Assembly (NCBI GenBank): GCA_010909165.1
Contig: MU008191.1
Coordinates: 186,001 to 250,000 of the forward strand
Origin: Anthoceros angustus
Lineage: Eukaryota; Plantae; Anthocerotophyta
Direction: 5' to 3'
DNA: 64,000 bases
Under the pieces are notes generated by a model. The model saw only the letters and a list, made by a program, of their open reading frames with translations, was not told where the DNA came from and did no database searches. The translations under genes were made by a program, and so were the position numbers. Shown here one piece after another: positions 5,094 to 48,900 of this stretch (the first letter of the stretch is position 1; each line of letters begins with the position of its first letter).

Positions 5094-5514
5094 TAACGTC
5101 GACAACAATCGGGCAACGAAGTCTTGATTGGCTTGTCGGGTATACCCCATATCACGCAGAAGACCTGCGTAGCAACTGTGGTCCTACTTAGACTAGCATC
5201 CGGGCATGGAAGTGTATGAGCCGTGTGTTCAGCACAAAGCGAACTATTCTTTCGCCTTTTACTAAAGAATACCGTGCGCGGGACACAAAAAGCGGCATAC
5301 TCCACTTTTTGGGCTGAGCCCTTCGGGGCTCTACAATTAAAACTTAAATCGGATCATAGCCATGGCTGACAGGTTACCGTGATTCCGCCATGTCTGATAT
5401 GTTGCCGCGATCCCGTTCCTTACGCCCCATGACTGAGCAGTGGCATCCTGCGTGATGTGATCCTCCCGTGCGGTCAAAACGAGTACGGTGTACGATGCTG
5501 CCAAAACGATTTTT

Positions 5515-6301: not shown

Positions 6302-8963
6302 CTACTCATTTTCAATGGTTTTGGGTGCATTCTGAGCTCTAAGAGTGTGTACACTGCCCTTCTTGAGCTGAAGGTTTACCTTTTCCAAAAGGTCGTACAG
6401 TTCCTCGTGTTGCGAGTGGTTATCTCCAACCACAAACGAGTACACTTCCTGGTCATGCTCAATCCAACTCTGGGCAGGATCCTTCCAGGTACCTTGCTTC
6501 TCCATTAGCCTATGCAACTCCGTTGCATGTTCGGAGATGCCAGCGGCAGCATATATCTGTGACATCAACAGATATGGGGCGGCATCCTTACGGTCCAGAT
6601 GCACTGCACATTCAAATGCCTGTTCTCCCAGAACTGCGTTGCCATGTTTTCGACACCCACCCAGCAAACACAGCCACAAGGCCCGATTAGGCTGCATTGG
6701 CATTGTGAGCAGCATGTTTTCTACCTGCTTGAAATGTCCTGCACGTGCAAAGAGGTCTATCATACTGACGTAGTGATCGATTGCTGGAGTTATGCCATGA
6801 TCTCTGCTCATGGAGTTGAAATACACCACCCCTTGGTCCACTAGACCAGCATGTCGACATGCAGAAAGAAGTGCAAGGAAGGTAACCGCGTCAGGCTTCC
6901 TCCCGGCTAGTTGCATTCTCTCATAGCATTGCAGGGCTTCCTTAGAGCATCCGTGCTGAGCATATCCCGCAAGCATCGTGTTCCAAGCCACCACATCCCT
7001 GCTGGGTAGTGTCTCAAAAACTCCGCAGGCACCATCGAGGTTCCCGCATTTCGCATACATGTCCAACAGGCAGTTGCCAATAAGCTCATCGGCCTGCAGT
7101 CCTTTTTCTTGAATATGGGAGTGTATGTCCATACCTTGGTGCAAGGCTCCAATACTAGCACATGCTTTCAAAAGGCACATCCATGTAACCTGATTCGGGA
7201 CACAAACACCCTCCTGCTGCATATTTGAATAAAGGCTAAGGGATTCTTGGCCAAGCCCATGCTGAGCATAGCCTGCAAGCAGTGCGTTCCATGTCACCAC
7301 ATCTCTTGCAGGCATCTTGTCGAACACCCTACGGGAATATTCTAAGCTCCCACATTTTGCATACATGTCTACAAGACTGTTCCCGACAACAAGGTCTGCC
7401 CCCAATCCCTGGCCAAGAATCTGAGCGTGAAGCTGTTCACCTTGATGTAGAGCTCCAACCCTGGCACAAGCTTTCAAAAGACAAACAAATGTGACATGAT
7501 CGGCTGGACTAACGCCATCCTTCTGCATATCAGCATACAGCATGAGACATTCTTGACCCCACCCTTCCTTAGCATATCCTGCAATCATGGCAGTCCATGC
7601 GATAACGTCTTTCAGGGGCAACATGTCAAACACATGGCGAGCATCCTCAAGGCTGCCGCATTTTGCGTACATGTCCACCAGGCAGCTGCCAAGAACCACA
7701 TCAGCTTCCCAGCCCCTTCTCTGAATCTGGGAGTGAAGCTCCTTGCCCTGATGTAAAGCTCCAAAGCTGGCACACGCTTTAAGGAGGCATACAAATGTGG
7801 ACTGATTACCTAAAATGGCACCCTCCTGTTGCATACTGGAGAATAGAGAAAACGACTCCTGACCACGCCCATGCTGAGCGTATCCTGCAATCATCGCATT
7901 CCATGACACCACGTCCTTGGAGGTTAAGCCGTCGAACACTATGCGGGCATCCTCTAAACTCCCACATTTTGCATACATGTTCACCAGGCTGCTACCAAGG
8001 AACACATTCAATTCACACTTGCTCTGCACAATATCAGCATGTACCTCCTTGCCCGATACGACATCTGCTGCTGCACCACAAGCTTTTAGCACCGCCACAA
8101 ACACGTAGGTGTTGGGCTTCACAGCTGACAGTTGCATCTGTTTATACAGTCGTATGACATGGGTGGGTTGCCCATATTCAGCATGTGCCAGAATAATGGA
8201 GAGCCACATGGAAGCATTGCGTGTAGCTACACTATCGAACACCTTAGTAGCTTGCTGCAAGCTACCACGAGAAGCATACATGCGAATGATGCGGTCTGCC
8301 AAGGACGTGTTTGAGAAGGACCCGCTTTTGAGTACAAGAGCATGAACACGCGTTCCCAGAACGCCATCCTTGTCAGCTGCACAACTTCTGAGGAGACAAT
8401 GGAACAGGGATGAAGATACATACGACCCTCGTGCCACCAGAAGGGCCAAGGCCTCAACGTCCTCACTGAGTCCCTCTCCACTCGATTCCCTCCAGGTTCC
8501 ATTCTTCAGGTGCGTGTCAGGCTCGGCTGCTCTTGCACTGTCAAAATTGCCATGGTTCAGGTTCGTATCCCCAAGTCTGTCTCCAAGGGCTTCACATGTT
8601 GGCAAAGCAGCTGAAGGACAGCGGAAGAAAACTGCACCTCTCAACAAAATTCCCACTGCCAGCTCTGAGTTGGAATCTTCGTAGACATAGAATGTTTGCT
8701 GGTCCCAGCCCCTGTGTGGGTGGGCGTTCTCTGCGCTGTTGAAACGAACAACGGCTTGGAGACGTACAGCTGCTCAGGTGCCCATCACACAGATGGCAAA
8801 TGGATGGCACTGAATACTGATGTACCTTATGGGATGACAATCTGCTCTGCTCCGGTGCGCCCAGGGGCATCAACTGGTGCTTGCACAAGCTCTCCACATG
8901 GGAACCGAATTTGACTGGAACCAAGCGCCACCCAAGCCAATTGCCACCAAGACGACCACGCAT
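6302..8963 (-). CDS. PLS-class PPR protein with E1-E2 and truncated DYW (E+), organellar RNA-editing specificity factor
   Basis: 784-aa ORF with about 5 PLS triplets (xxMYAKCGSLEDAR.VFD / DVVxWNAMIAGYAQHG / TFVCLLKAC), P2-L2-S2, E domains and PAQSWIEHDQEVYSFVVGD, ending before HxE/CxxC. The 5' exons from ATG 8963 are inferred from GT-AG phasing and are less certain. Confidence 0.92.
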
Positions 8964-9222: not shown

Positions 9223-12200
9223 ATGAGCGCGAGAAGAGCTGGTGAAACCGCCGCACATTTGACCCTGTTCCGCCCAACACAAGGTCGACCCAGCACTTGG
9301 AAGCTACGGTGTGGGCTCCTGTCATCGTTGAGGGGAACAGCAAACCATTTTCTTGAGCATCGACGACCTCCTTGTGTACATCATTCGACACCAACTCACC
9401 GTGCGGCAATACACGGGTGAGACGTTGGGTCCAATTTTCTTGTTGCCATGCTTGCCTAATTAGCTTTTCCGCCTTGAAATCCGTCAATCGTGCAGGGGGG
9501 TGGAGAAGGAATCAAGGGATGGGAACCAGAGTGAATCGCGTGATGATGGCCAGCTCCATAATGCTGTTCAGCAGGTGGGCCTCATGGTGGAACGAGGATC
9601 ATATGTTCCTTTATCGCTCTTGCATGGTGTTCTCAAAGACTGCAATACGGAAAAAGATCTGGATCTTGGGAGGAGCGTTCATGCTCTTACTTGCAAGAGT
9701 GGGTACGAGTCAAGTGCGTTCTTGGCCAACGACCTTATTCGTATGTATGTTTCGCATGGAAGATTGCAGGAAGCAATGCAGCTGTTCGACAAATTGCTTG
9801 CACCAGACACTTTCTTATGGTCCTCCATCATTTTGGCTCATGCTGATCACGGACAGCCTGGACTTGCTTTGCAGCTTTTTAGACAGATGCAGCAGTCGGC
9901 TACCAAGCCAAACAAGTATGTCTTTGTTGCTGTCCTCAAAGCATGTGGACATGCAACGGATTTGGCATTCGGCAGACAAGTCCACGCTGATGTTCTGGAT
10001 ACCATGGGTGAGCCTAATGTGTACGTTGCCAGCAGTCTGGTGGACATGTATACCAAATGCGGCAGCTTAGGAGATGCTCGCAAAGTTTTTGATAGCTTAA
10101 CTGTAAAGGACGTGGTGCTGTGGAATGCTATGATGGCAGCATATGCTAAGAATGGGCTTTATCAAGAAGCTCTAGATCTCTTCGCCAGCATGCAACAGAA
10201 GGGCATCACTTCAGTTGATCGAGTTACACTCGTCTGCCTTCTGAAAGCTTGCTCTGGCATTGGAGATCTGCAGCAGGGTAAGGAGTTTCATCGCTGGATT
10301 CAGGAAATGGGATTGGAAGCTGATGTTGTCCTTGGTAGCTGTCTGGTGGACATGTACTCAAAATGTGGAAGCCTGGAGGATGCACGCAGGGTGTTCGATA
10401 AGTTGGCCAAGAAAGATGTTGTGACGTGGAATGCAATGCTTGGAGGGTATGCTCTGCACGGATTTGGTCAAGAATGCCTTAGTCTATACACAATTATGCA
10501 ACAGTTGGGTGTCAGTTCATCAAACCGTGTGACATTTGTGTGCCTTCTGAAAGCTTGCTCCAACGCTCAAGACTTATGTCAGGGCAAGAAGCTTCATGCT
10601 GAGATTCAGGAACGAGGACTGGAAAGTGATGTTATCATTGGAAACTGCCTCATTGATATGTATGCAAAATGTAGCAGCCTAGAAGATGCGCGTACACTGT
10701 TTGACGGATTGCCAATGAGAGATGTAGTGTCATGGAACGTGATGCTTTCGGGGTATGCTCAGCATGGGCTTGGTCAAGAGGCTTTGACTCTATATGAAAG
10801 TCTGCAGCAGGAGGCCATCGCTTCTGTGGATCATCTTACGTTTGCCTACCTGCTAAAAGCATGTGCTAATGTTAGTTCTCTACATCGAGGAAGGCAGGTT
10901 CATTCCCAGATTCTGGGCCGAAGACTGGAAGCTGATATTATAATTGGCAACTCTCTGGTGGACATGTATGCCAAGTGTGGGAGTCTAGAGGATGCTTGCA
11001 GTGTATTTGACAAGTTGACGGTGAAAGATGTGGTCACGTGGAATGCCATGCTGGCCGGATATGTGCAGCATGGGCTTGCTCAAGAAACGCTTGGCCTGTA
11101 TGCAAGTATGCAACAGGAGTGCTCCTTGCCAGCAAATCAGGTCACGTTTGTGGCCCTCCTAAAAGCGTGTGCAAGCATTGGAGCTTTACATCAGGGCAAG
11201 GAGTTTCACTTCCAAATTCAGGAAAGAGGACTGGACAGTGACTTGGTGATTTGCAACAGCTTGGTGTTCATGTATGCAAAATGTGGCAGCTTAGAGGATG
11301 CACGCACAGTGTTTGACCGTGTTCCCAGAAAAGATTTGGTGACCTGGAATGCCATGATCACAGGCTATGCTCAGCATGGCATGGGCAGCGAAGCTCTTGC
11401 CGTCTATTCAAGGATGCAGCAGGAGGGCATCACCCCAGCTGATCATATCACGCTTTCTGCCCTTTTAAAGGCGTGTGCCAGCATCAGAGACGTACACCAG
11501 GGAAAGCAGCTCCATCTTGATATGGAGTCCAAAGGGTTGGTCAATTTGGTTACTGGGAACTGTCTCGTGGATATGTATGCAAAATGTGGAAGCTTGGAGG
11601 ATGCTCGAAGTGTGTTTGATAGACTAACCACCAAAGATGTGGTGTCGTGGAATGCTATGCTTGCAGGTTATGCTCAGCATGAGCTTGGTCGAGAAGCTCT
11701 TAGTCTTTATGCGGTTATGCATCAGGAAGGCATCATACAAGCCAATCATGTCACATTTGTCTGCGTTCTGAAAGCATGCACGAGCCTAGGAGCTTTGCAT
11801 GAAGGCAAGAAGCTTCACACCGAGATTCAGAGCAGCGGACTGCAAGATGATATTGTCATTGGCAACTGCCTTGTGGACATGTATGCAAAGTGTGGGAGCT
11901 TAGAAGATGCTCGAAGGGTGTTTGACAGGATGCCAATTAGAGATGTGGTGACATGGACTGCCATGATCTCTGGCTATGCTGACCATGGGGTTGGCAAAGA
12001 ATCTCTAGCTCTTTATGACAGGATGCAAGAGGAGGGTATCACACCAACTGATCATATTGCGCTTGCCTGCCTTTTGAGAGCATGTGCCAGTGTTGGAGCC
12101 TTACCTCAGGGTAAGGAGCTTCATTCCCAAATAACAGGTCAAGGATTAGAAAAGGATGCGGTTATTGGCAACTGCCTCATGGACATGTATGCAAAATGTG

Positions 12201-13144
12201 GCAGCTTAGAGGATGCTCGGAGGGTATTTGAGAGACTGACCACCAAAGATATAGTGACTTGGAATGTTATGATCCGAGGATATGCTCAACATGGGCCTGG
12301 TCAGGAAGCCCTTGCTCTCTATGCAAGGATGCAAGTGGAGGGGAATACTCCTCCTGACCATATTACATTTGCTTGCCTCTTGAAAGCTTGTGCCAGTATT
12401 GGAACTCTACATAAAGGAGAGCAGCTCCATGCCCAGATTCAGGACTTGGGACTGGAAGCTGATGTGGTTGTTGGCAGCAGCCTGGTGGATATGTATGCAA
12501 AATGCGGGAGCTTACAGGATGCCTGCAAAGTTTTTGAAAGATTGCCCAGAAGAGACATTGTCACTTGGAATGCCATGATTGCTGGATATGCGCAGCATGG
12601 GTGCTGTCCAGAGGCCCTCCAATGCTACGAGAAAATGCAGGAGGTGGGTGTGAAGCCAGATCAAGTTACATTTCTCTCACTTCTTTCTGCTTGCAGCCAT
12701 GCTGGGCTCGTCGACAAAGGCGTTGGATACTTTGCATCCATGAGCAGGGATCATGGGCTAACTCCAGACATTCAGCATTACGTCAGCATGGTAGACTTGT
12801 ATGGCCGTGCAGGATGCTTCACACCGTTACGAGATTTGTTGTCAAAAATGCCAGTGCAGCCTGATCTGGCCATGTGCTTGTGCTTGCTCGGTGCTTGTCG
12901 GAAGCATGGCAATGTAGAGCTGGGTGAAGAAGCCTTTTACTTTGCAGTTCGTCTGCAGCCGACACATGCTGCTTCATATATGTTAATGTCACAGATCTAC
13001 TCTGATGCTGGTCTTTTGGAACACGCACTAGAGGTGCATGTTTTGAGACAAGCTGAAGGTGCATGGAAGAAGCAAGGCAAGAGCTGGATTGAGTGTGAGC
13101 AGCAAGTTCAGACTTTTGTGGTAGGGGATCACGAGTTCCCATAG
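9223..13144 (+). CDS. Long PLS-class PPR protein (about 10 PLS triplets) with E1-E2 and PG box only (E/E+)
   Basis: join(9223..9416,9496..13144): the intron is in phase and exon 1 is a transit-peptide-like Arg/Ser/Thr-rich segment. Nine xMYxKCxSL S-motifs follow the first motif. The protein ends GKSWIECEQQVQTFVVGDHEFP*. Confidence 0.95.
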
Positions 13145-36500: not shown

Positions 36501-37221
36501 TCAAGCCTCCCTTCCGCAGACCAGCTTTTCGGCTGCAACCCCTTGGGGGCTCGGCCTGGCCGTTGGGCACCTGTGTCGCATGTGCGTTACGGTGATGCGT
36601 GCATTCCATCGGCTGCTTCATGTGAAATTGGGCGCAGCAGGCCCGACACATGCGTGGCCTTCGTCCAGGGGAAAGGAGAAACAAAGTGTACACTTCAGTC
36701 ACCGCGGTGTTAGTCGACCCAGTGTTAGCAGACAGGAATCTGGTCCAGAATTAGGGCATCAGGCTGCGACCAGGGTCAATCGGACAATCCCCCTGCTCCC
36801 GACACATAGCAACAAGGCAGAATTTGTGTGCTCGATAAGATGCCGGTCAAAGGCGGGGGGGCATGCACGTCGTAGTGCAGCCTGACACAGCACGCAGTGT
36901 CAGGCGACTTGTGGTCCGCAGACTCCAGCTTCCATGAGTCAGACGCAACCCGAGTCCAGGACCGAGCAGTTTGCTTCCCCCGAGGGCTCATCACTTGCAA
37001 CGCCACCCACTACGAGTTTGGCAGGACGCGGGAGGAAGGAAGGGACTGAGGAAATGTCTGTCTGCTCGATTGTCCAGCTGCCGGAACTTCCTGGGGAAGC
37101 TTCGGGGATTGTGTTGATGTGCGGGGGGGACTAGAACTCGTTACTGGTACAGGATGGAAGGCTGATCTGGGCTTCTAGAAGACGGCAGTGCGACAGGTCT
37201 CCTGGCCCAGCCTCTGTCCCC

Positions 37222-40200
37222 TCACCCGAGCTCCACGCTGGCCGCGTCGCCTTGCTTCACCACCACGTCAACCAGGTCGAAGCCTTGTGCGATGTCGCTG
37301 TAAGCTTGGGACACGATGAGAACGGTGCCTTGTGCCAGGTCTCGCAGCGCCGAAATCACTCTCGCCTTGCCCTCCCCGTCCAGATGCTGCAGTGCAGAGC
37401 GGTTGCCCGACATTAGAGAGATGGCATGACTTGGAGAGGGCGTTCAACTTCACTTTATCAGAGAGATGGCATGACATGACGAGGGAGTTCAACTTCACAT
37501 TTGTCTTGCGTCATGACAGGTGCTTCTTACCTGTAGCACCTCGTCCAGAACCAGAAGATCACAGTGTAGGCCGCCTCTCTCGGCTGCAAGCTCAGCATAC
37601 CCTAAGGCCAGTGCCAGTGCCTGCAAGCGAGATGTGTAGACGACCATAAGCTTGATCAACATCCACATGAACGAACATACATGAACTGGGTGAAAGCAGG
37701 ACAAGAGCATGTGCCACTCACCAGCCTGCGACGCTCACCCCCGCTCAGCTGACGGATGGAACGTTCCTCGGTCGTGCCGTCCGCCAAACGGACAACAGCG
37801 ATCTTCTCGATGCTCTCCACACTAGTCTTGGTTGATTTCCGTTCCCTGGTAGGGTTCAACAATAGGTCTAATGACCCGCCGGAGAAAGCATGCGCGAAAC
37901 GAGCTGTCCGTTCTTGCAGCTCTGCCAATGCACTTTCCAACACGTAGCTCTGCAGCACGGACACAGAGGCATCATGTGTGTGAGCCCCATGTGAACAAAG
38001 GCACCAAGATGGAAGATACCGAGGCACTGGAAGATCCCTAGTACCTGGATACCGCTGTGGCCAAATGCTGCATCTATCTCCTTCAACCATAGAGCAGACT
38101 GCTTTGCTTGCTCGAGGGAGGCCACCTTCTCCTGCAGTTCCTTCTCTACTCGGGTTTGGTACTCGGAGAGGGACCTGTACTCTGCTGCATAAAGGTTTTT
38201 CTCAGTTCTTGCCACGTCCAGGGTCCGCTTCACATCCTGCAACCTCCTGGTGCACACCCTTGCATCAGCCACTTTTCCGTTAAGCTCCACAACCAGCTGT
38301 CTCAGTTGTTCCAGTTTTGGTTCAAGGGAGTCATCGAAAGAAAGAGCTTGATTCTGGCTTTCGTCACGTTCTGGATGCACATTTTGAGAGTGCAGCTCAG
38401 GGGACATGTCCTTCAGTTCACGTGAGATGAAGCTGCAAGCTTCCTCCACACAAACTTTCGCGGATGCAACGGCCTCCCAAGTTCTGTTCACCTGCCGAAA
38501 CAGTCCATTGAAAGTATGAAGACTGCAGAGGGTAAGAATACTGTCACGTAAAGCCTTATCAATCCAGAAACTCACCCGAGCAAGAACCTTGTTGGACTTT
38601 GCCTTCTGCGAAGCACGTGCACTTGCTTGCTGTTGGTTCATCTCCACCATTGCTGCAGTCAAAGATAAACTTTTTTGTGCTATCTCCGATCTTGCCTGGA
38701 AATGCGAAGGTCTGTCAGTCACAGCATTTCGAGTTACCTCAGCCAGTACCTAGCAAACTTCACAAAGAAGAGGAGATTTGCAACACTCACTGCTTCAAGA
38801 TTCACTATCCGCTGCTGCAAGGCAGTAATGTCCTTCCATAAACGTGTTACGTGCTCAGAAATATGACTCGCAGAAATATCCTGGTGACAATGGTCACAGA
38901 ACAGTGTGTTCGAAGTGCTCTCCTGGAACTTCTTCAGCGTATTCGCCCTCTGCCTTACAGCATCTAGTGCGTGTTTGTGCTGAAACATTCAGAGTCATTT
39001 CCATTCAGAGACATCCAGGAGACTGCTTGCATCTCTGTAGTGCATCCAAGACTCCTAGTCCGTTCATCCCTACTGCAAGGGTGGAAATGCTGACCTCTAC
39101 TTCAATCTCTGTTTGCTGTCTCACAAGTGAATCACGTTCCTCTGACCTCATGCTAATGGTCGTACCAGTGGGTTCTTGTAGAGGAACGGAATCAGAGACC
39201 AAAAACTGCTCCAGAGAAATTGCAAAAGAATCCCACTCCCTTACAGAGTCTAGCACCATCTGCAAACAGCGAGTGCAATCTGCTGATGCTCTTCTCAGCT
39301 CTGCTTGAGCGAGATGAAGTTCAGACTCCATACGAGACAGCTTTCTGGCCCTGGAAATAAGAAGAAGAGGTGTGACCAAACTATGCACATCACTGCTGCT
39401 CCTTCAAACACTGTATCACCGAAAGACTGGCTATTTCCAGACACCTCCTCTCACATGCATCACAGGAGATTAAATGGAACCACTTACTGTGATTGCTCCC
39501 AATCTTGCACACGTTGATGTGAAAGCTTCACCTACAGGTCGGACAACTCAATACACAGCTGAGGTAAGCAAGGATTTCGTTCTGGTCACGCACGTAGTTG
39601 ATGTCCCATTGTTATGTGCAATGCTACATGTCTGAGTGGAAAGGGAAAAATGGTGTAAAATTCCTCTTCTGCACCTGATCTGAGAGCTGCATATTTTGTT
39701 CGGATAATTGTGCAGCCGCCCCTCCCATGTTCTCTACTTGATCTCGCACATGCCTAAGATCTGTGGTGCTTTTCTCCTTTGCTGCAAACCAAATTTCCAT
39801 CAAGACTACTCTGCTGAGCTCCTCCTGCAGAACCAATGCTGTCATGAGAGACCTATACTTGATAACCTGAAAGCATAGAAACCTTGGCTACATCTTACCT
39901 TGAAAGTTTTGTCATTGGCTTCAAGCAATCCACCAACCCCATACTGCCCATGAAAAACGGCTCGGTGCAATAGAGTCGTATTTCTGGGAGCCGCGTATGT
40001 CAGAATACATAACTACTAATATGGTAAGTGCCATGCCAGTCCAAAGCAGGGGTACTGGCAAGGGTGATTAACAGATACACTTACAAGGATGCGTCGATTC
40101 GTTCTTGAGTCAACTTAATCTCCTGGCATGTTTGATCCTCTCCATCCAAAATAAATCTCAGTGATTTCCGACTGAAACCAGCATATACGCCGGTAAGCAA

Positions 40201-42805
40201 TGTAGAACACCGACCATCACAAAAAGGAACAACCATTCTGTGTCACATTACCTGCCTGCCGTACGCTCTATCATAAAAGGCTTCTCATTGACTGTGCCCT
40301 CCACCTGGACTCGAGCTCGTTTAGACTTGTGATGGACAACGTCGGATGCTGTTAAGCCTTTCGCTGAGTCTGGTCGAGGATCTGTCGAACCTGAAATAGA
40401 AGTTACAGCATACCGGACATTGGTACACAGATCTTAAGGGAAAGCAATCACTTGGGACACAAGAACAGACTTACCTGTGATTGCCCATAGGGGAGCCATT
40501 ACAAGTGTCGTTTTCCCAGCACCATTACTATCGGCTCCATAGGAATCTGAGTTTCTACCAGAAACAACCCTTATTCCCCGCTGTGCAAGTGGATATGTCA
40601 CAGGATCCAAAAAGGGGCCAAATCCCTCCAGCTCAACAGACTTCAACACCAGCCAAACTACAAGGGACAAAGAGAGCTTCAGTAAGATAACAGCAAACAG
40701 AAAGACACAATCACAACAGATTTCTGGAGCACTTGAGAAAACCTTGAGGCCTCTGAATGGCATTGGCAGGCAATGACAACGCATGGAGGATCTCTACAGC
40801 CATTTTAGTGGCCCCAATACTCATGTTCACACTCTTTGCATACAGTCTGAAGAGTTCAAATGCATTCTGCAAGGTCAACAAATGAAGTAAAAACCCAAGC
40901 TGAAAAATAAAATATTCCAAGAGAGAAAAGCTCACCGTAGTGAAATCAGCCACCTCTACTGACCAGGTCCTCAGCATTCTCGATGCGGGGTCTCGGAGCA
41001 ATGCTCGGAAAGACAATGTCAATATGCACTCCTTCACGCTTGAGCTTAGTCTGTTCCAAAAGCCAGGTGATCCTTTGTGAAATTTACGACTGGATTGGGC
41101 ACAAACTCATGTAGCACCCGAAAACGTCCATACGCAACCACAATACAAGCACTTCAGAACAAGGTCATACAGAACAGGCTACCAGGAGTTTTTTTGCAGG
41201 GTTTGACAGCGTTTCAGTTGGCAGGAGCCAGCGTACACGGTCACCTTTTCGGAGAGATTTTATGGCATCTGTGTCTAGTATTTCATTTTCATAAATATAA
41301 TGGCGTGGCCCAATGTCAATGGGGATCTCACCAACTTTCTGCAGGATCAGGAAATTCACAATGGTTAGAGACATTCATAGCTTGAACGTAAACATGGCCA
41401 AAGAAATCAAACGAGTTGCAGCATCACACCCAAAGTTGCCCATCCAATACTGCTTACTTACTTCCCACTGGTGATTAAGAAGCAAAAGCCTCTTTGCCTG
41501 TCCACTTTCGCTGGCAGAAACCTGATAGGGCGAGCCAACGTACTCAATCTGACTGCCATTAACAACATGCGGCTTGTGGTAGTGGCCCGTAAAAACTGGC
41601 AGATGTGAAGGGAAAATGGATGGATCAATGCCATCGCTTGCCTGACGTTGCTCACTCATATATGCCCCAACCTGATGCGGCTCACACCTGTTCCTGGTTA
41701 GTCATGAGTACCCAGATTCTAACAGCCAAGGGAAAACGAAGCAACTCACACATGACTGCGCACCACATCAAGATGGGCGAAGATGACCCTTGTATCAGAA
41801 TGGCTTGTCACAGCATCCTTGATAACACCTGGCTCTCGTCGAAAGGGTAGCCACAATGCTCCCAAGTACTGAGTGGGCTCTGATATAACTTTAATATAGT
41901 AATTTGTAGCTTCCAGCACACTGAGAGCATGAACCTCCCCGCCATGATTGACCTGCAGAGTGATGTATAAAACTTGATACGCTCATGGTAGTGAGCTGCG
42001 ACTGGGTATCTTCAGAGGGTGCTACGAGAAAGACCTGGTCATGGTTGCCCGGTATGAAAATTGTTGGACAGGACCATGTCTGCAGCTCAGAGACGGCCAA
42101 GTTCAACAGCTCCACTGGGAGAGCTCCTCTCGCATGCCAAAAGTCTCCTAAGAATATTATTCCTGCATTCCTGGACAGCACACAATCTACAGCTGAGAGC
42201 TTGAGCAATACAAGAGAGCAGGCCCTGACCTGCTGTCTCCACAGGGAGGACAAAAAGTCTCACCTTGCAGATGCCTCGGCATGCACAGTTTGAAGGACTT
42301 CCAAGCAGATGTCAGCAGTTCTCCTGCTCAAGTGCAGGTCCGAGAAAACCACCCATGTCTTCACCTCTGCCCATATATCGGCATCCGTGAGCAGTCCCTG
42401 AAGCAAAAGAAAGATGTCGGTCAACATTTGCTCTCCACTAACTGGTCCCATTCTTCACCGACGCACCTTCAAACACTCTACCTTCAGCCTCTGTGCTGAA
42501 GCTGCAAAAGGCGACAAGTTCGGATGCACAAACTCATCTGGCACCGCGGTGTTCTGTTCTGCTTTCAACCCTCGGAGTAAGCTTTCCTGAAAATGCAAAC
42601 TTGCCGCAACGCAGCGAAGCAGTCTCGGTCCTTTTCCACTCTTCCTTGACAGCGGGTGCTCAAGATCATGTCCAGACTTCAGCTGAGCCAATCCTTGCAC
42701 CCTCCAGTGAACCAGCCTCACGCAATAGCATCTCAAACCGACGTCTTTGTATCTCACAAGAACAGAGAACGGCAAACGCAGAACTCCAGGCCTTGCGAGC
42801 ACCAT
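37222..42805 (-). CDS. Single-chain SbcD/Mre11-like metallophosphoesterase nuclease fused to SbcC/Rad50-like SMC ABC-ATPase, with a putative organellar transit peptide (multi-exon)
   Basis: Nuclease motifs: FSDLH, LGDFWH, PGNHD, FAH, FTGHYHKPH, YVGSPYQ. ATPase motifs: LEGFGPF, SNGAGKTT (Walker A), FHGQ (Q-loop), coiled coils, CDHC zinc hook (38887-38898), LSGGERRRL, LLVLDEVLQHLD (Walker B/D-loop). The linker splices in frame (RPQ|VWLVLKSVELEGF). Confidence 0.9.
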
Positions 42806-45558
42806 GACTAGGAAAAAGCCGGGGCCAACGTCCTCATCGAAGAAGCAGCTCCTCCGCCAATCTGTAGCCCAAGCTGCATTGGCACCGTGGTCCTCGTAAG
42901 CTTATGGGCATTTCAGCTTGCTCCGCCGATCAAAGAACTGGGCGCTTCACTAGCGTGCAAGAAGATGAAGGGCAGCTGAAATTCTTTAAAAGATCGGGGA
43001 AAGCCGCTTCATTTTCGCCCTTTGCCTGCATACTGCATGGGGATGATGCGCGGACAATTAGAGAGAGGCCACTTTGTACATACTGCCTTATTCATTGTCA
43101 GCTCGGAAGGTGATCGGCTCAAGCATTTCGATGGCACTAAATGCTTTCCTTTGTTTTTTACGCGGGCGTCCTACTGCCTTCAAAACTCAGCAAACTTCAG
43201 ACTCTTTGCTCATCGTTCCTGACAGCCTCACTGAATCCCTGGCCACGTCCCTCCTCCCGCCACCCAATCCAGCCGAGAGTTAGTGCAGTTCGGACACGCC
43301 AGCGGTGCCGAAAATTGATTGGGCCTGGACAGTCAGGCCAATACGTCCAAGGACACCGGAACCGGATGCAATTGGAGCCATTCTTCGTCCAGGAACCAGA
43401 TAATTTCCGCAATTTGCAGCTCTCGAGGATGCTGATGACGAGCCCAAGAAGAGACGATGGCGGCTGCGGCCGTCCTGGACTCCTGCGCAAGGGCCTGCAG
43501 AAGTTGCCATGGTCTTGTGAAGACGCGACCTTGGCGTGTGGGCGTTTGTGGCGGGCGGGATGGCACTTCAGGTGCAGGAGGATTGATCAGACGGGGCCCG
43601 TCACAGAAATCTGGAGATGTGTAATAAAGCCGAAAGATTTGGTGAAGCATCGCGTTGCCTGGAGCGGCGTGGGGAGGAGGGCCCGGGGTGCTGTCTCCGA
43701 GGCGAGCTGCATGCAAATGATAGTCGGGCCGGGGAATGACGAGCCTTGGGTGGACCCGGGCTGGCTTGTTACCAACGCACATTCATGACATATGGTCATG
43801 AGGCTGTTAGTACGGGATCACACACACAGCAAATGGAGAGGCTCCTTCTTACTATCACTCGTCAAAGGATTACATCAGCCAGCTTGCCTAAACTCAAGCA
43901 CGAGGGCTTACGTAATATCGTTTCTTCCCAACAATCTGGCTTTGGGCTACAGCGTAATGGCAATCCATTACCTACAAATGCTATTCGTATGCACCGTGCA
44001 GACTAACGCTACCGTCGTCCCTCAATCTCGAACGTATCAAAGGAAGGGGTCCTCCAGTGGAGTGCTGCAGGGATGACTTGATACCCTCAACTCGTACGCC
44101 GAACACCTTGTCTCACAGATCGACCTAGAAGAGGACTCGGACAAAAGAGATATCTAGCTTGTAGGAGCGAAGGCCATAGCTCCATACAGGAACCGAGCTT
44201 TTCGTTTCAAACAAGGAGGTCACCTCTTATAGCAGGCCCTTGTTTCTACCTTAAAAATCTCTACGTAAGACTACGCCCCCTGCTCAATTCCCTAGGTCTT
44301 TCTAACATAAGGAACATGCTACATGCTTGGATCATTTCCTATTTCCAGCAGTCTACGTATGACCAGGCTCTAGCACGGCTTTCCACGTAAACAGCTCTTT
44401 CCCCTAACAGTGGCACGCCCCCTGGCCGCTGCCTGGCCCGTAGATCCCCTGGTCATGAGGTCAGGAAAACCAAAAAGCCGAGATATGTCCTTCTTGTTCT
44501 GACACACTTACAAATATCCCCACACACACATACCTAGGTAGACATGGAATTCCATGAGTGGCCCAATGATGTGTACACACCACACCAGCCTGTGACATTC
44601 ATCGGGCTCAAAGATAGTCAAGGCCCCGGAGCGAACTTGAGTAAAGCTTACCACGATCCTAACTCAAACACAGCTCGAATCGTGTCCAGCAGTTCACACA
44701 AAGGAATCCTAAGCTCTAGTTGTTACTCACATATTCTCCCAGCCTGGATAAGAACCTTACGCAGGCTTCTTGCTCGTACATGATTCCTCTTCCTCGTGAG
44801 GGATGGGTGCATAAGAACTCCCCTTCCACTCCTATACGAGCTTTTGCATTAGCTTCACAAGTTCCTCAGGCGGCTCACCCTCAGCCTCATTCGAATGTAT
44901 CCCAAGTGAATCCACCAACAATTTCTTATGTGCCCCAGAGGTCAGGTTGCTCTCCCCCAAACTTCGTTACCAATTTCAGGAATTCTCACATTATGGGGAC
45001 CAACGCCAGTATACGACACCTTTCCTAAGTAACGTTAAGAAGGGACTTAGCAGAGCATGCCAACCAAAATACTCACGTGACCTTCCTCACACTCTTAGCA
45101 TGGCTAACCAAGCAAGCAAATCCGCATGGTTGGAGGGGCAAATGTGGTCACAGCAAGATCCATCCACTTTCATCACCTCAACATCTGCAGAAACTTGATG
45201 TAACCATATACGCGACCTTAGATGAGACCAACATACTTTGACATGCTACGGACCATTCGAATAGACTACTCCTCAGAGATACGGCTAAGGGCCCCTCAAA
45301 CACTCAAAGTCCTCGATAGGACACCAGGCATTATGCCTTTCACGGTAAGCTTAAGCTAACCACAACTTCACCTCTTGCTTGTATCATGGGTCATGAAGGC
45401 AAAACCAGTACCAGCCATGTGCATTTCAAGACAAGCTAGAACTAAATTAAAATTTTTAAGTTGCATAGAAGCAAATGATGACTTTCACTTTTGGAACATA
45501 GTGCATAAAAATCTGATTGAAGTAAAAGCTAAAAGATTATGATACTATTGATACTGAA

Positions 45559-45902: not shown

Positions 45903-48900
45903 TTAAGGAGACGCCTCCTTAGAAGGAACGGGCTGAACAACATGATTCCCTCCCGTTCTCTTAGTAAACATCAAACGCACACTTGGTCCTAGCTTTTCGT
46001 TAAGTTTAATCATGATTAAGAACAAGCATCTGTAGAGAAAAACTTGTACAAAAATAATACCAAGATTCGTCCATTTGCCCCTGCTTTCCGGAACTTGATA
46101 ATACTGACGGACTACTTCTTCCCCACTAATCAATACTTGATTTTGCGGATAGTCTCTGGGCCGAAACTGCAGGCCTAAAAAGTCGTTCTCGAATAATCCC
46201 TGTCCACCCCCACATTCTCTATTAGCTTAAAAGGATGAATTATGGACGATGGAAAGAATAACTAAACATAATAGGTACCTATTACGCTTCACGATGAACT
46301 AGATCAGCATAAGGAGAAAAAACAAAATGCTGGATTTGCTATTGGCTAGATAAGAATCCGCACAGGTTGAAAATCCCAACCAAACGCACCTGAAAGCCAT
46401 AGGTGTGAAAAGCGATGTAGGAGATAGGGTACCGCCACACGGGCTTGGGCAGGTCATTGGGCAGGCGGAAGAAACCACCGTTTAGCATGAAAAAACCCTA
46501 CAGTCCACCGTGAGCGTTAGATACAGACCTTTGCGTAAGACTTCTCAAGGTCCGAATAGAATGAAAAAGGAAGCCAAACAGACCTGAATTCCAGCTCCGA
46601 TGATTATGCCCATGAGGAAGTTTGGGACTACGCTTGAGATTGCCATCATCAAGCCCTCCACAGCAGATGTGGTGGAGAAGATGATCAAGACGAAGTAAAG
46701 GAAGTGGATAAAGCCGGGATGCAGGTCCACCAGGAAGTACATAGAGGCTCCAGAAATGAAAGCGATGAGCAATAGGAATGGAAGAGAAGAGAGGGTGCTA
46801 CTGATGACAAAAGCTCCCACCCCATAGTGCCCGTTGAGCCGCTCTCGAGAGAACACCTGCTAGTATTGAGTTAGGTTGTGAGACTCTTGTCATTGCCAAG
46901 CTTGGAGTAAGCAACAAAGTCATGCAAAGTGTACCTTCATCTCCTCTACAAAAGAAGGGAATCCCCCAATGGCCATGAAGGTGAGGAAGCTAACGACAAA
47001 TGCCAAGCACGATGCTCTTGCCTGTACCAGCACCACCAACAACACGCAAGGAAAGATGTTAAGAACAACGACTAGGCTGCACAGAATGGAGATATGGGGA
47101 CCTGAGTCGAAATGCTCACTCACCTGTATGGCATTATAGCTATTGCCGACGTTGTAGAATATGGTTCCGATGGCCAGGCACAGAGCAAGATACATTGCAA
47201 GACGTAGCCAGTAGTAACCCACGTCTCTGGACATGTTGACGAAGGACCTTCGAGTGAGGGTGAAACACTGCATCAGGGTGCTGGCTTCGCTTCCTGTCGA
47301 CTCTTGCAAGGAGCCATTCTGCAATAAGTCGATGTGATTTAGCTATGCATGATGGAGAAGGCATCGCCAAACAGAAGCAGGGATGGTCGTGCTTGGTGTT
47401 GGAAAGGAGACGACATACCATCTTAGAGATCTGTTCAGCAGTATCTGCGGCATTTTGAGCAAAACTGGATGACTTATACTTGCTCACTAGCATGTCCACT
47501 CGTGATGCGGTGGACATAGCTTTAAGAGGATCCGAATCTTCAGGATCAGCGGGGTCCTGATCATCCCAGCTAGCGCTCGGTGTCCGGGACGCCTGCACAT
47601 GCCACATGTGATGAGATCGAAGAGCACAACAAGGTGTAAACGCGAGATGGTGGGAAGGTAGATGAATTCCCACCGGCAGAACTCTGCGAGATCCTTGAAC
47701 AGCAACCGAGACTTTGTCGAAGTCCGAGTTGATTGCACGAAGAAAATGGTCCGCTGGATTCCGCCATGGTGGACAAGGTATACCAGCATCCAGAAAATGC
47801 TGATTCAACACGGGACATCCAGTCACCACATGTAAATGATATGCACTGGATTACGCATCCAAATCCTGATCCCTGCTCTACCAACCTGTTTAGCCTCCAC
47901 AGCGGCACCAAAGTATATCGTCCTGCCTCCAGATAGCAGGACGAGGTCGTCGAATAGCTCAAAGACTTCGCTGCTGGGCTGGTGAATAGAAGTGATGACA
48001 GTCCGTCCATCTCGAGCCAAATTCTTCAACGTAGTCGTAACAAAGAAGGCTGCAGCACTGCAACAAGCCCACCTCCCATTTCAGAACCGAATCAGTACGA
48101 GAAGAAACAAAAAACACAACTGCCAATGTGCACCATCCCCGCACACCTATCCAAGCCACTGGTAGGCTCATCCAGAAACAACAAGCGAGGCTTGGTGAGC
48201 AGCTCCAAGGCAATGGTGACCCGTCTCCTCTCACCCCCGCTCACCCCTCTGAGATGCCAATTCCCTATGGGCGTGTGCGCAGCTTCCTGAAGACCCATTT
48301 CCTGGATCGTGTTGTTAATAATCTCCATCTTCTGTGCCCTGGGCATCCTATCCGGAAGCCGGAAGAAAGCCGAGTACATTATAGTCTCAAACACGGTGAG
48401 AGTCCCGAGCAAGTTGTCATCCTGCGTCACATAGGCCTACAATCACAGCAACGATGAGCTCCCAAAGTGACAGTGACAGTAACAGTCCCAGTCCTAGTCC
48501 TAGTCCTAGTCCTAGTCCTAGTCCCAAAACTAGTCTCATTCCCTTAATGCCCACTTACCGCCACGCCGTAAGACAGCCTCTGCTTATTCCCATTGAGCCA
48601 AATGTGCCCCGTCTGCCTCGCATTCTTAGCCAGCCTCCCTGTCCAAATGACAATGTGATCCACCAAACCACTTCCTGTCAAGCATTGTGCGAGACCAGGT
48701 CCTTCCCGAAGGACCCAACAAAACTGTCACGTCCCACACACCTGCCAGAGTATCGAGAAGGGTGGATTTGCCGGAGCCAGAAGGCCCCATGATGGCAGTG
48801 ATCTGCCCAGGCTCTGCGTACCCAGTCACGCCATCCAGCAGAAGTCGAGATCTCCCTGAAGCCCATGACGCCGTCACACTGAGATTCCTCCAGGCCAGGT

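What the first reader, a model, noticed from the sequence alone, without database searches (positions are those of the whole stretch)
37222..42805. Intron-containing plant gene for a one-piece SbcD-SbcC (Mre11-Rad50-type) nuclease-ATPase with an organellar leader
Seen: a complete metallophosphoesterase module splices in frame into a complete SbcC/Rad50 ATPase (Walker A, Q-loop, coiled coil, CxxC hook, LSGGE, Walker B), behind about 110 aa of Arg/Leu/Ser-rich leader. Established: nuclear MRE11 and RAD50 are separate, larger genes. The compact motifs here (YVGSPYQ, LEGFGPF, SNGAGKTT) look like bacterial SbcCD or T4 gp47/gp46, and a Mre11/Rad50 fusion is known from Mimivirus. Inference: this is a domesticated prokaryote- or virus-type enzyme imported into plastids or mitochondria to resect breaks or cleave hairpins. 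It would be an organellar genome-maintenance system that I do not know from angiosperm models.
Basis: partly seen in the sequence, partly recalled or inferred. Interest (0 to 1): 0.85.

Follow-up and report, generated by a model that had tools for sequence, protein, structure and literature searches.

The report
Phage-type fused Mre11-Rad50 plant gene
This is a real, spliced and expressed plant nuclear gene for a single protein joining a phage-type DNA-end nuclease to its ATPase partner; the family has been known in moss, green algae and diatoms since 2011, occurs only in plastid-bearing lineages, is missing from seed plants, and probably works in organelles, though that is untested.

Summary
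On the minus strand, 21 exons (ATG at 42805, stop at 37222-37224, 20 GT..AG introns) give an uninterrupted 1180-aa frame. It holds a basic leader, all five Mre11/SbcD motifs, two linker helices, and a Rad50/SbcC ATPase with coiled coil and CDHC hook. One 100%-identical spliced contig from a public run spans the whole gene, including the nuclease/ATPase junction.

The gene is not new. It belongs to the fused Mre11/Rad50 family reported in 2011 from Physcomitrella, Micromonas and Phaeodactylum (PMC3175470).

New here:
- Named members come only from plastid-bearing lineages. None is from a fern, seed plant or oomycete.
- The eukaryotic clade is monophyletic. Its sister group is already-fused genes on viral contigs, flanked by UvsX-like recombinase and RuvC-like resolvase genes.
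- Intron positions are shared with Marchantia.
- Diatom members carry a signal peptide followed by an aromatic residue, which is typical of plastid import.
- Green-lineage and diatom members have Gln in place of the H-loop His.

Organellar import is plausible but unproven; the window's own leader looks like a presequence of undetermined destination. One 82-nt intron is retained in the assembled transcripts and would truncate the protein.

The joined protein was not searched or folded. Single exons and orthologues were used instead.

The parts
42482..42805 (-). Exon 1: start codon and a 108-aa leader that is basic, Leu-rich and poor in acidic residues, and has no similarity to any family
   Evidence: No Pfam hit. 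First 50 aa: 8 Arg/Lys, 3 Asp/Glu, 2 Ser/Thr. The equivalent part of the orthologue is modelled as disordered, pLDDT about 28.
42264..42397 (-). Exon 2: phosphoesterase motif I (DLH)
   Evidence: Family-invariant D101 and H103 are kept at 42340 and 42334.
42035..42170 (-). Exon 3: motifs II (GDFWH) and III (GNHD)
   Evidence: Pfam Metallophos 2.4e-4. PHROG 100 SbcD-like 6e-6. Invariants kept.
41953..42034 (-). Intron 3 (82 nt, GTCTTT..TGCAG), retained in the assembled transcripts of two species
   Evidence: X1 and X4 contigs run unbroken over 41762-42169. If kept, the frame stops at 41891-41893. Homology requires its removal. Marchantia has an intron at the same place.
41764..41952 (-). Exon 4: motif IV (AHLD)
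   Evidence: H231 at 41775.
41462..41671 (-). Exon 5: motif V (GHYH) and YVGSPYQ
   Evidence: NCBIfam SbcD models 1.4e-5. PHROG 100 9.4e-10.
40743..41338 (-). Exons 6-8 (41183-41338, 40964-41050, 40743-40866): capping domain and the two helices that link to the ATPase
   Evidence: The orthologue model shows a capping-domain sheet and helices 388-399 and 403-415. Foldseek aligns the whole nuclease half to E. coli SbcD.
40658..40742 (-).
   Evidence: Joint 40657/40743 is present in the contigs of X1, X2, X4 and X19.
40475..40657 (-). Exon 9: Rad50 N-terminal strand (LEGFGPF) and Walker A (SNGAGKTT)
   Evidence: Pfam AAA_23 3.7e-5. This exon found 387 relatives, many of 1100-1400 aa with the match at residues 340-670.
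39899..40390 (-). Exons 10-12 (40252-40390, 40085-40171, 39899-39983): ATPase N-lobe and Q-loop (FHGQ)
   Evidence: Q577 at 39946.
39095..39824 (-). Exons 13-15: ascending coiled-coil arm
   Evidence: The orthologue model has long helices 602-707 and 726-767.
38791..38979 (-). Exon 16: hook with CDHC (CxxC)
   Evidence: Family C771 (nearly invariant) and C774 (invariant) are kept at 38898 and 38889. They lie at the turn between the two arms in the model.
38045..38695 (-). Exons 17-18: descending coiled-coil arm
   Evidence: Differences from related species' transcripts fall mostly on third codon positions.
37722..37949 (-). Exon 19: ATPase C-lobe with signature LSGGE
   Evidence: It is 70.5% identical to Marchantia over this exon.
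37531..37620 (-). Exon 20: Walker B (LLVLDE)
   Evidence: D1094 and E1095 at 37545 and 37542.
37222..37386 (-). Exon 21: D-loop (HLD), Gln in place of the H-loop His (LIVSQ), and the stop codon

Best explanation
Shown: this is an intact, intron-bearing, transcribed nuclear gene of a non-seed land plant (probably a hornwort). It encodes one 1180-aa polypeptide made of an N-terminal leader, an Mre11/SbcD-type Mn-phosphoesterase nuclease with capping domain, two linker helices, and a Rad50/SbcC-type ABC ATPase whose antiparallel coiled coil ends in a CxxC hook. It is an orthologue of the fused Mre11/Rad50 family first reported in 2011 from moss, prasinophytes and a diatom. The family forms one clade, is inherited vertically in the green lineage, and is sister to already-fused genes that sit in recombination modules on viral contigs.

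Inferred mechanism: two chains pair through the nuclease domains and, by zinc, through the hooks, forming the equivalent of an M2R2 complex. ATP binding engages the two ATPase heads on DNA ends or hairpins. Hydrolysis lets the nuclease cut and resect, as in SbcCD and T4 gp46/47. This would supply 3' tails for RecA-type recombination repair and recombination-dependent replication.

Inferred place of action: an organelle. The plastid is favoured by the family's distribution and by diatom targeting signals. A mitochondrial or dual location is not excluded for this plant.
For: Gene and frame:
- 21 exons, 20 GT..AG introns, 1180 aa without a stop.
- All family-invariant catalytic residues are kept.
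- Of 37 listed differences from related species' transcripts, 26 are synonymous and 24 lie at third codon positions.

Expression as one piece:
- A single 100%-identical spliced contig covers both halves, and the same joints are seen in three other runs.

Family:
- Collinear full-length orthologues exist in lycophyte, liverworts and mosses.
- The 2011 description is PMC3175470.

Fold (on the orthologue P0007):
- The nuclease half gives pLDDT 88.9, with E. coli SbcD in the SbcCD head as top match (1.5e-15, TM 0.61).
- The full-length model shows a disordered leader, heads, a long helical hairpin and the hook. The top match is Chaetomium Rad50.

Phage type:
- PHROG 77 scores 1.5e-52 and PHROG 100 scores 1.8e-28.
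- The tree puts the eukaryotic clade (100/99) next to the fused viral ORFs L036, L037 and L040.
- L036 and L040 are flanked by UvsX-like recombinase and RuvC-like resolvase genes, and L036 also by an SSB gene. L037's neighbours were not scanned.

Vertical descent:
- The green part of the tree follows the species tree.
- Intron positions are shared with Marchantia.

Organelle:
- Every eukaryotic member examined with a complete N-terminus has a leader of about 40-340 aa that the phage relatives lack.
- Six Thalassiosirales members have a hydrophobic signal-like segment followed by S|F or S|Y, and Cyclotella cryptica has R|F. Other ochrophytes have signal-like N-termini.
- Named members come only from green plants and algae, red algae, ochrophytes, a cryptophyte, Chromera and Euglena, including the non-photosynthetic diatom Nitzschia Nitz4. 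None is from an oomycete, animal or fungus.
Against: - No localisation, proteomic or genetic data were found for any member.
- No targeting predictor was available. The window's leader is Arg/Leu-rich and Ser-poor, more like a mitochondrial than a plastid presequence.
- Some algal gene models lack a leader or start at an internal module.
- The assembled transcripts retain intron 3, which would truncate the protein at 245 aa. The productive mRNA is therefore inferred, not seen.
- The H-loop His, important for hydrolysis in many ABC ATPases, is Gln.
- The family scores far below the curated cut-offs for SbcC and SbcD.
- Fold evidence rests on an orthologue, not on the window's own joined protein.
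- The runs are only guessed to be RNA, although contigs lacking GT..AG introns can hardly be anything else.
Confidence: 0.6

Rival explanations
1. The protein is real and active but works in the nucleus or cytosol. It would be a second, non-canonical end- or hairpin-processing nuclease, or a guard against foreign or viral DNA. The N-terminal extension would be a disordered regulatory tail rather than a targeting signal.
For: Nothing shows import. PADLOC gives a match of the ATPase half to a defence-system ATPase (mad3, 1e-24), and the phage relative matches LmuB. The 2011 paper proposed only that the fused proteins have a role different from canonical MR. The window's leader is not typical of a plastid transit peptide.
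Against: The defence matches cover only the generic SMC-like head and are weaker than the match to the phage recombination nuclease family (85 against 180 bits). Leaders are present throughout the eukaryotic members but not conserved in sequence, basic and acid-poor. Diatom members begin with signal-peptide-like segments followed by an aromatic residue, which does not fit a nuclear protein. The restriction to plastid-bearing lineages is not explained.
Confidence: 0.25
2. The gene is mitochondrial only, serving recombination surveillance of the mitochondrial genome.
For: The first 50 residues of the window's leader and of the moss orthologues are Arg-rich and Ser-poor. Many plant organellar DNA-maintenance proteins are mitochondrial or dual-targeted (general knowledge).
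Against: All eukaryotes have mitochondria, yet the family was found only where there is a plastid. Diatom members carry ER-type signal peptides, which mitochondrial proteins lack. Diphasiastrum, Marchantia and Sphagnum leaders are Ser/Thr-rich like plastid transit peptides.
Confidence: 0.1
3. In this species the gene is effectively silent or decaying: the retained intron makes a truncated 245-aa product and no full-length protein is made.
For: The only X1 contig and organism C's contig retain intron 3, giving a premature stop. No full-length protein from this genome appeared among the database hits.
Against: The other 19 introns are precisely removed. All downstream exons are open and keep every invariant residue. 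Substitutions against related species are mostly synonymous. Contigs of X2 appear to break at both borders of intron 3, as expected if both forms exist. Contigs drop rare variants, so absence of the spliced form is not shown.
Confidence: 0.04
4. The two halves are separate genes, or the stretch is bacterial or phage contamination.
For: Most prokaryotic and viral relatives are adjacent gene pairs, not fusions.
Against: One spliced contig crosses the junction. There are twenty spliceosomal introns, at positions shared with Marchantia. The flanks carry plant PPR genes and a U5 snRNA.
Confidence: 0.01

Closest known systems
Fused Mre11/Rad50 proteins of the 'moss-diatom-prasinophyte group' (Physcomitrella A9RK34, Micromonas C1N0B1 and C1FJU6, Phaeodactylum B7FXD6; Yoshida, Claverie and Ogata 2011, PMC3175470)
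   Same: Same domain order and length. The exon holding Walker A is 79% identical to a moss-type member (P0003), whose 90% cluster holds the Physcomitrium protein. The gene is collinear with related full-length proteins and falls in the same clade of the tree by its orthologues.
   Different: A new species and probably a new lineage (hornwort). The 2011 paper read the distribution as sporadic lateral transfer and did not consider organelles. Today's sampling shows a plastid-lineage-wide, largely vertical pattern.
Fused SbcD-SbcC ORFs of uncultured phages (IMG/VR contigs L036, L037, L040), and phage gp47/gp46-type recombination nucleases (PHROG 100 and 77)
   Same: Same fusion order and the same motifs. 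They are sister to the eukaryotic clade, with strong profile matches. L036 and L040 sit in a recombination module with UvsX-like recombinase and RuvC-like resolvase genes.
   Different: About 25-34% identity only. The phage genes have no leader and no introns and are 973-1006 aa long. The phage proteins keep the H-loop His. Cultured phages (Herelleviridae, T4) have two genes rather than one.
E. coli SbcCD (structures 6S6V, 7YZO)
   Same: It is the best structural match of the nuclease half, covering the nuclease and capping domains and the C-terminal helices. It shares the ABC head, coiled coil and CxxC hook architecture, and the mechanism is inferred from it.
   Different: Two subunits. About 17-18% identity. 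The family reaches only 20-33 bits against NCBIfam SbcC and SbcD models whose cut-offs are 478 and 78. E. coli SbcCD is distant in the tree.
Canonical eukaryotic MRE11-RAD50(-NBS1)
   Same: Same superfamily and same overall logic. Chaetomium and human Rad50 and human MRE11 appear among the fold matches.
   Different: Separate, larger genes. No match to any other Pfam family (including the Mre11 DNA-binding domain or the Rad50 zinc-hook family) appeared in the orthologues at E up to 0.01. The 2011 tree places the fused group outside the canonical clades. The moss keeps canonical MRE11 and RAD50 as well.
Mimivirus R555 Mre11/Rad50 fusion
   Same: One-piece nuclease-ATPase in a virus, reported in the same 2011 paper.
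   Different: In that paper R555 and its metagenomic relatives form a separate group from the moss-diatom-prasinophyte group. This was not retested here.

Membership tests
Mre11/SbcD-type nuclease | Five calcineurin-like phosphoesterase motifs with their metal-binding Asp, His and Asn residues | tested here: met
   DLH, GDFWH, GNHD, AHLD and GHYH are in exons 2-5. They are invariant across 24 family members and kept in the window. Pfam Metallophos hits exon 3.
Mre11/SbcD-type nuclease | Nuclease-plus-capping-domain fold | tested here: met
   Tested on the orthologue P0007 residues 88-432, not on the window's joined protein. pLDDT 88.9. Top matches are E. coli SbcD and Thermotoga, Pyrococcus and Methanocaldococcus Mre11, TM 0.55-0.62.
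Mre11/SbcD-type nuclease | Score above the curated cut-off of the SbcD family models | tested here: not met
   TIGR00619 scores 17-29 bits against a cut-off of 77.65. The SbcD equivalog models score about 24 bits against 450-480.
Mre11/SbcD-type nuclease | Mn-dependent exo- and endonuclease activity | not testable with these tools
   Needs purified protein.
Rad50/SbcC ABC ATPase | Walker A, Q-loop, signature, Walker B and D-loop motifs | tested here: met
   SNGAGKTT, FHGQ, LSGGE, LLVLDE and HLD. The residues are conserved across the family and kept in the window. In the orthologues, Pfam SMC_N scores 44.7-57.5 bits against a cut-off of 40 and AAA_23 scores 34.8-41.2 against 27.
Rad50/SbcC ABC ATPase | H-loop histidine | tested here: not met
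   The window has LIVSQ. Gln is found in green-lineage and diatom members, while His is kept in Cyanidium, E. coli SbcC and the aligned phage and bacterial relatives.
Rad50/SbcC ABC ATPase | Long antiparallel coiled coil with a CxxC zinc hook at its tip | tested here: met
   CDHC is in exon 16, with both Cys kept (C774 invariant, C771 nearly so). The orthologue model has helices 602-767 and 780-1015 with the hook at 768-779. Zinc binding itself was not tested.
Rad50/SbcC ABC ATPase | Score above the curated cut-off of the SbcC family model | tested here: not met
   TIGR00618 scores 24-33 bits against a cut-off of 478.5.
Fused Mre11/Rad50 family of plastid-bearing eukaryotes (2011 'moss-diatom-prasinophyte group') | Both halves in one polypeptide, made from one transcript | tested here: met
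   One frame across 21 exons. One spliced contig spans both halves, although intron 3 is retained in it.
Fused Mre11/Rad50 family of plastid-bearing eukaryotes (2011 'moss-diatom-prasinophyte group') | Orthology to the moss and green-algal members | tested here: met
   Full-length collinearity, with 54-70% identity in the best-conserved catalytic exons and about 30-50% elsewhere, against Diphasiastrum and Marchantia. The moss-type hit P0003 clusters with the Physcomitrium protein. Intron positions are shared with Marchantia. The window's joined protein was not put in the tree.
Phage gp47/gp46-type recombination nuclease (PHROG 100 and 77) | Significant match to both phage profiles | tested here: met
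   Orthologues: 1.5e-52 and 1.8e-28. Window exons 3 and 5: 6e-6 and 9e-10.
Canonical eukaryotic MRE11 and RAD50 | Separate genes, Mre11 DNA-binding domain, and placement in the eukaryotic clade | tested here: not met
   The gene is fused. No Pfam family beyond the six listed appeared in the orthologues at E up to 0.01. The nearest relatives are phage genes. The published tree places the group outside the canonical clades. Canonical sequences could not be added to my own tree.
Organelle-imported protein | Cleavable N-terminal targeting sequence | tested here: inconclusive
   A leader of about 114 aa that is basic and acid-poor; the equivalent leader is disordered in the orthologue model. No TargetP or similar predictor was available. 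Diatom members show a signal peptide followed by an aromatic residue.
Organelle-imported protein | Observed in plastids or mitochondria | not testable with these tools
   No localisation or proteome report was found.

The most novel reading that the evidence does not exclude
This family is the missing break-end and hairpin-processing nuclease of plastid DNA (perhaps also of mitochondrial DNA). It would be a phage recombination nuclease, already fused, captured once near the origin of primary plastids. It then moved with secondary plastids into ochrophytes, cryptophytes, chromerids and euglenids, and was later lost in ferns and seed plants. That would make it another phage-derived part of the organellar DNA machinery, alongside the T7-like RNA polymerase and Twinkle.
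Probability: 0.4. Interest if true: 0.75.

Novelty: new member of a known kind. Interest (0 to 1): 0.55.

Why it matters
It is not known which enzyme starts resection of broken ends in plant organelles. A 2021 review can only propose RecJ- and RecQ-like proteins by analogy (PMC8383295). An Mre11-Rad50-class nuclease present in every sampled plastid-bearing lineage except ferns and seed plants would be a concrete candidate. It can be tested directly in Physcomitrium, Marchantia, Chlamydomonas relatives or diatoms.

Three further points follow:
- What the 2011 paper saw as sporadic lateral transfer now looks like one ancient capture from a phage followed by vertical and plastid-linked inheritance.
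- The loss in seed plants raises the question of what replaced the enzyme there.
- For annotation, the retained intron may explain why no full-length model for this species appeared in the protein databases.

Tried and rejected
- Cyanobacterial origin. A pattern scan of 185,579 prokaryotic species genomes gave only 21-33% identical relatives and no cyanobacterium. This scan is limited to the patterns used, so it is weak evidence.
- Close cultured phage relatives. None was found: Herelleviridae pairs are 21-28% identical.
- Organism identification. A neighbouring PPR gene gave named hits of only 41-48% identity. Earlier-findings searches gave nothing relevant. 'Hornwort' remains my guess, based on tiny introns, about 50% GC, many PLS-class PPR genes, and a genome of roughly 120 Mb or more (1867 windows of 64 kb noted so far, on 265 pieces).
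- Literature. Searches for any functional or localisation study of the family found only the 2011 paper. One search was a syntax error.
- Tree building. The trees reported use LG+G4.
- Defence-system reading. It was considered because of PADLOC mad3 and LmuB matches, and ranked low.
- Steps not run. Complex prediction was not used, so the homodimer is inferred from the family. The joined spliced protein of the window was not sent to any search, fold or tree. Scripts only walked the exons to check frame and codon positions, single exons were searched by reference, and orthologues served as proxies.

Full report
**Observation**

I fixed the exon borders from three sources. The first was the joints of public contigs laid on 37100-42900. 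The second was a GT..AG check of each joint. The third was reading the sequence by eye where the table was cut.

The model has 21 coding exons and 20 introns of 74-144 nt, all GT..AG. The ATG is at 42805 and the stop at 37222-37224, giving an open frame of 1180 aa. Its exon lengths also add up to the spacing of the pieces inside the X1 contig.

Single exons hit Pfam Metallophos and AAA_23, NCBIfam SbcD models and the phage SbcD-like family PHROG 100. Each exon aligns to consecutive parts of the Diphasiastrum orthologue. All 66 invariant residues of a 24-member family alignment are present. Two apparent misses were a spurious alignment of exon 1 and a codon split by an intron.

**Expression**

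Run X1 (organism A) holds 56% of the sampled words of the genomic stretch, about the exon share. It has one contig of 4844 nt with no mismatch. That contig runs from beyond 42900 to beyond 37100 with 19 introns removed, including 40658-40742 between the nuclease and the ATPase. Contigs from organisms B, C and D (about 90-99% alike) show the same joints. The library type is only guessed to be RNA, but contigs lacking GT..AG introns are cDNA-like. The two-transcript rival is therefore rejected.

One reservation remains. The 82-nt intron 41953-42034 (weak donor GTCTTT) is retained in the X1 and X4 contigs and would stop the frame at 41891-41893 after 245 aa. Homology needs it removed, and Marchantia has an intron at the same place.

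Downstream exons are intact. Of 37 listed differences from related species' transcripts, 26 are synonymous. I read the intron as slowly or conditionally spliced, not as a dead gene. The productive junction itself was not seen.

**What it is**

The Walker A exon found 387 relatives among 1.84 billion representatives. Many are 1100-1400 aa long with the match at residues 340-670, that is, fused. A search seeded with the Diphasiastrum protein found full-length members in the following groups:
- a lycophyte, liverworts and mosses;
- streptophyte and chlorophyte algae;
- red algae;
- diatoms, a cryptophyte, Chromera and Euglena.

A diatom-seeded search added brown and yellow-green algae and the non-photosynthetic diatom Nitzschia Nitz4. 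It found no oomycete, animal or fungus. No fern or seed plant appeared, although the database holds them.

The family was described in 2011 as Mre11/Rad50 fusions in Physcomitrella, Micromonas and Phaeodactylum, placed outside the canonical clades (PMC3175470). So the gene is a new member of a known, uncharacterised family.

**Relatives and origin**

- Bacterial SbcC and SbcD models are matched far below their cut-offs.
- A PDB profile search finds archaeal and Thermotoga Rad50, then SMC6 and yeast RAD50 at lower scores, and SbcD.
- Phage profiles match best: PHROG 77 at 1.5e-52 and PHROG 100 at 1.8e-28.
- Prokaryotic and viral relatives are mostly adjacent nuclease-ATPase gene pairs. Three viral contigs (L036, L037, L040) carry single fused ORFs of 973-1006 aa.
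- L036 and L040 are flanked by UvsX-like recombinase and RuvC-like resolvase genes, and L036 also by an SSB gene. L037's neighbours were not scanned.

In maximum-likelihood trees the eukaryotic family is one clade (100/99) and is sister to these fused phage genes. E. coli SbcCD, T4 gp47/46 and Brochothrix phage A9 are distant. Inside the clade the green lineage follows the species tree: Chlorokybus with Mesostigma, then Spirogloea next to land plants. This pattern, together with the shared intron positions, argues for ancient capture and vertical descent.

The trees use LG+G4. Canonical eukaryotic sequences and the window's own joined protein are not in them.

**Structure (orthologue P0007 as proxy)**

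The nuclease half folds with pLDDT 88.9 and matches E. coli SbcD in the SbcCD head complex best. Prokaryotic Mre11 comes next and human MRE11 after that. The full-length model has these parts:

| Residues | Feature |
|---|---|
| 1-87 | disordered leader |
| about 88-385 | nuclease and capping domains |
| 388-415 | two linker helices |
| about 428-600 and 1019-1150 | bipartite ATPase head |
| 602-767 and 780-1015 | long helical hairpin |
| 768-779 | hook, with the CxxC at its tip |

**Mechanism and place**

By analogy with SbcCD and gp46/47, I infer a homodimer that clamps DNA ends or hairpins when ATP is bound and cuts on hydrolysis, feeding RecA-type recombination.

An organellar site is supported indirectly:
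- Every eukaryotic member examined with a complete N-terminus has a non-conserved, basic, acid-poor leader that the phage relatives lack.
- Six Thalassiosirales members show a hydrophobic signal-like segment followed by S|F or S|Y, and Cyclotella cryptica shows R|F. This is the known hallmark of diatom plastid import. Other ochrophytes have signal-like N-termini.
- The family is restricted to plastid-bearing lineages.

The window's own leader is Arg/Leu-rich and Ser-poor, so for this plant the destination is open: plastid, mitochondrion or both. No experimental study was found.

**Oddities**

- Gln replaces the H-loop His in green-lineage and diatom members, but not in Cyanidium or the phage relatives.
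- Diatom and Euglena members share an extra N-terminal GxGWYxV module, and Euglena groups with diatoms in the tree.

**Limits**

Exons were searched singly by reference, scripts only walked the exons for frame and codon position, and orthologues stood in for the whole protein.

**Verdict**

The gene is a new member of a known family, with a testable and still unproven organellar role.

Noticed in passing
window 41953-42034 (-): This is the only one of 20 introns kept in the assembled transcripts of two species. It has a weak donor (GTCTTT), and its retention gives a premature stop. It may be a detained or regulated intron.
   Followed up: partly
window about 37290-37310 (-); family alignment A1: The H-loop His of the ATPase is Gln in green-lineage and diatom members. 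It is His in the red alga Cyanidium and in the aligned phage and bacterial relatives.
   Followed up: partly
window 42806-42900 and beyond (-): The X1 contig runs 692 nt past 42900, at least 787 nt upstream of the ATG. This is either a long 5' leader or read-through from a neighbour; it was not resolved.
   Followed up: no
window 5219-5333 (+): U5 spliceosomal snRNA gene (Rfam RF00020, 89 bits, full length).
   Followed up: no
window 2611-3738 (+), 6302-8656 (-), 9500-13144 (+): Three intronless PPR genes. Two are PLS-class with an E motif (candidate RNA-editing factors). The best named relatives are only 41-48% identical.
   Followed up: partly
window 46920-48430 (-): Exons of an ABC transporter (ABC_tran at 48092-48430, ABC2_membrane at 46920-47324). 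This explains a weak ATPase cross-hit at 48149-48355.
   Followed up: no
proteins P0215, P0217, P0228, P0226, P0241 and others: Diatom and Euglena members carry a small extra module (xVGDxV...GxGWYxV, SH3- or Tudor-like) between the leader and the nuclease. In the tree Euglena groups with diatoms, not with green algae.
   Followed up: partly
loci L036 1379-6470 and L040 1821-6969: Uncultured phage recombination cassette: UvsX-like recombinase, fused SbcD-SbcC and RuvC-like resolvase in a row. L036 also has an SSB gene upstream. No cultured phage relative exceeds about 25% identity.
   Followed up: partly
protein P0227 (Galdieria, 1666 aa): The gene model ends in a dehydrogenase (PF00180) instead of the ATPase C-lobe, so two genes were probably merged by the annotator.
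   Followed up: no
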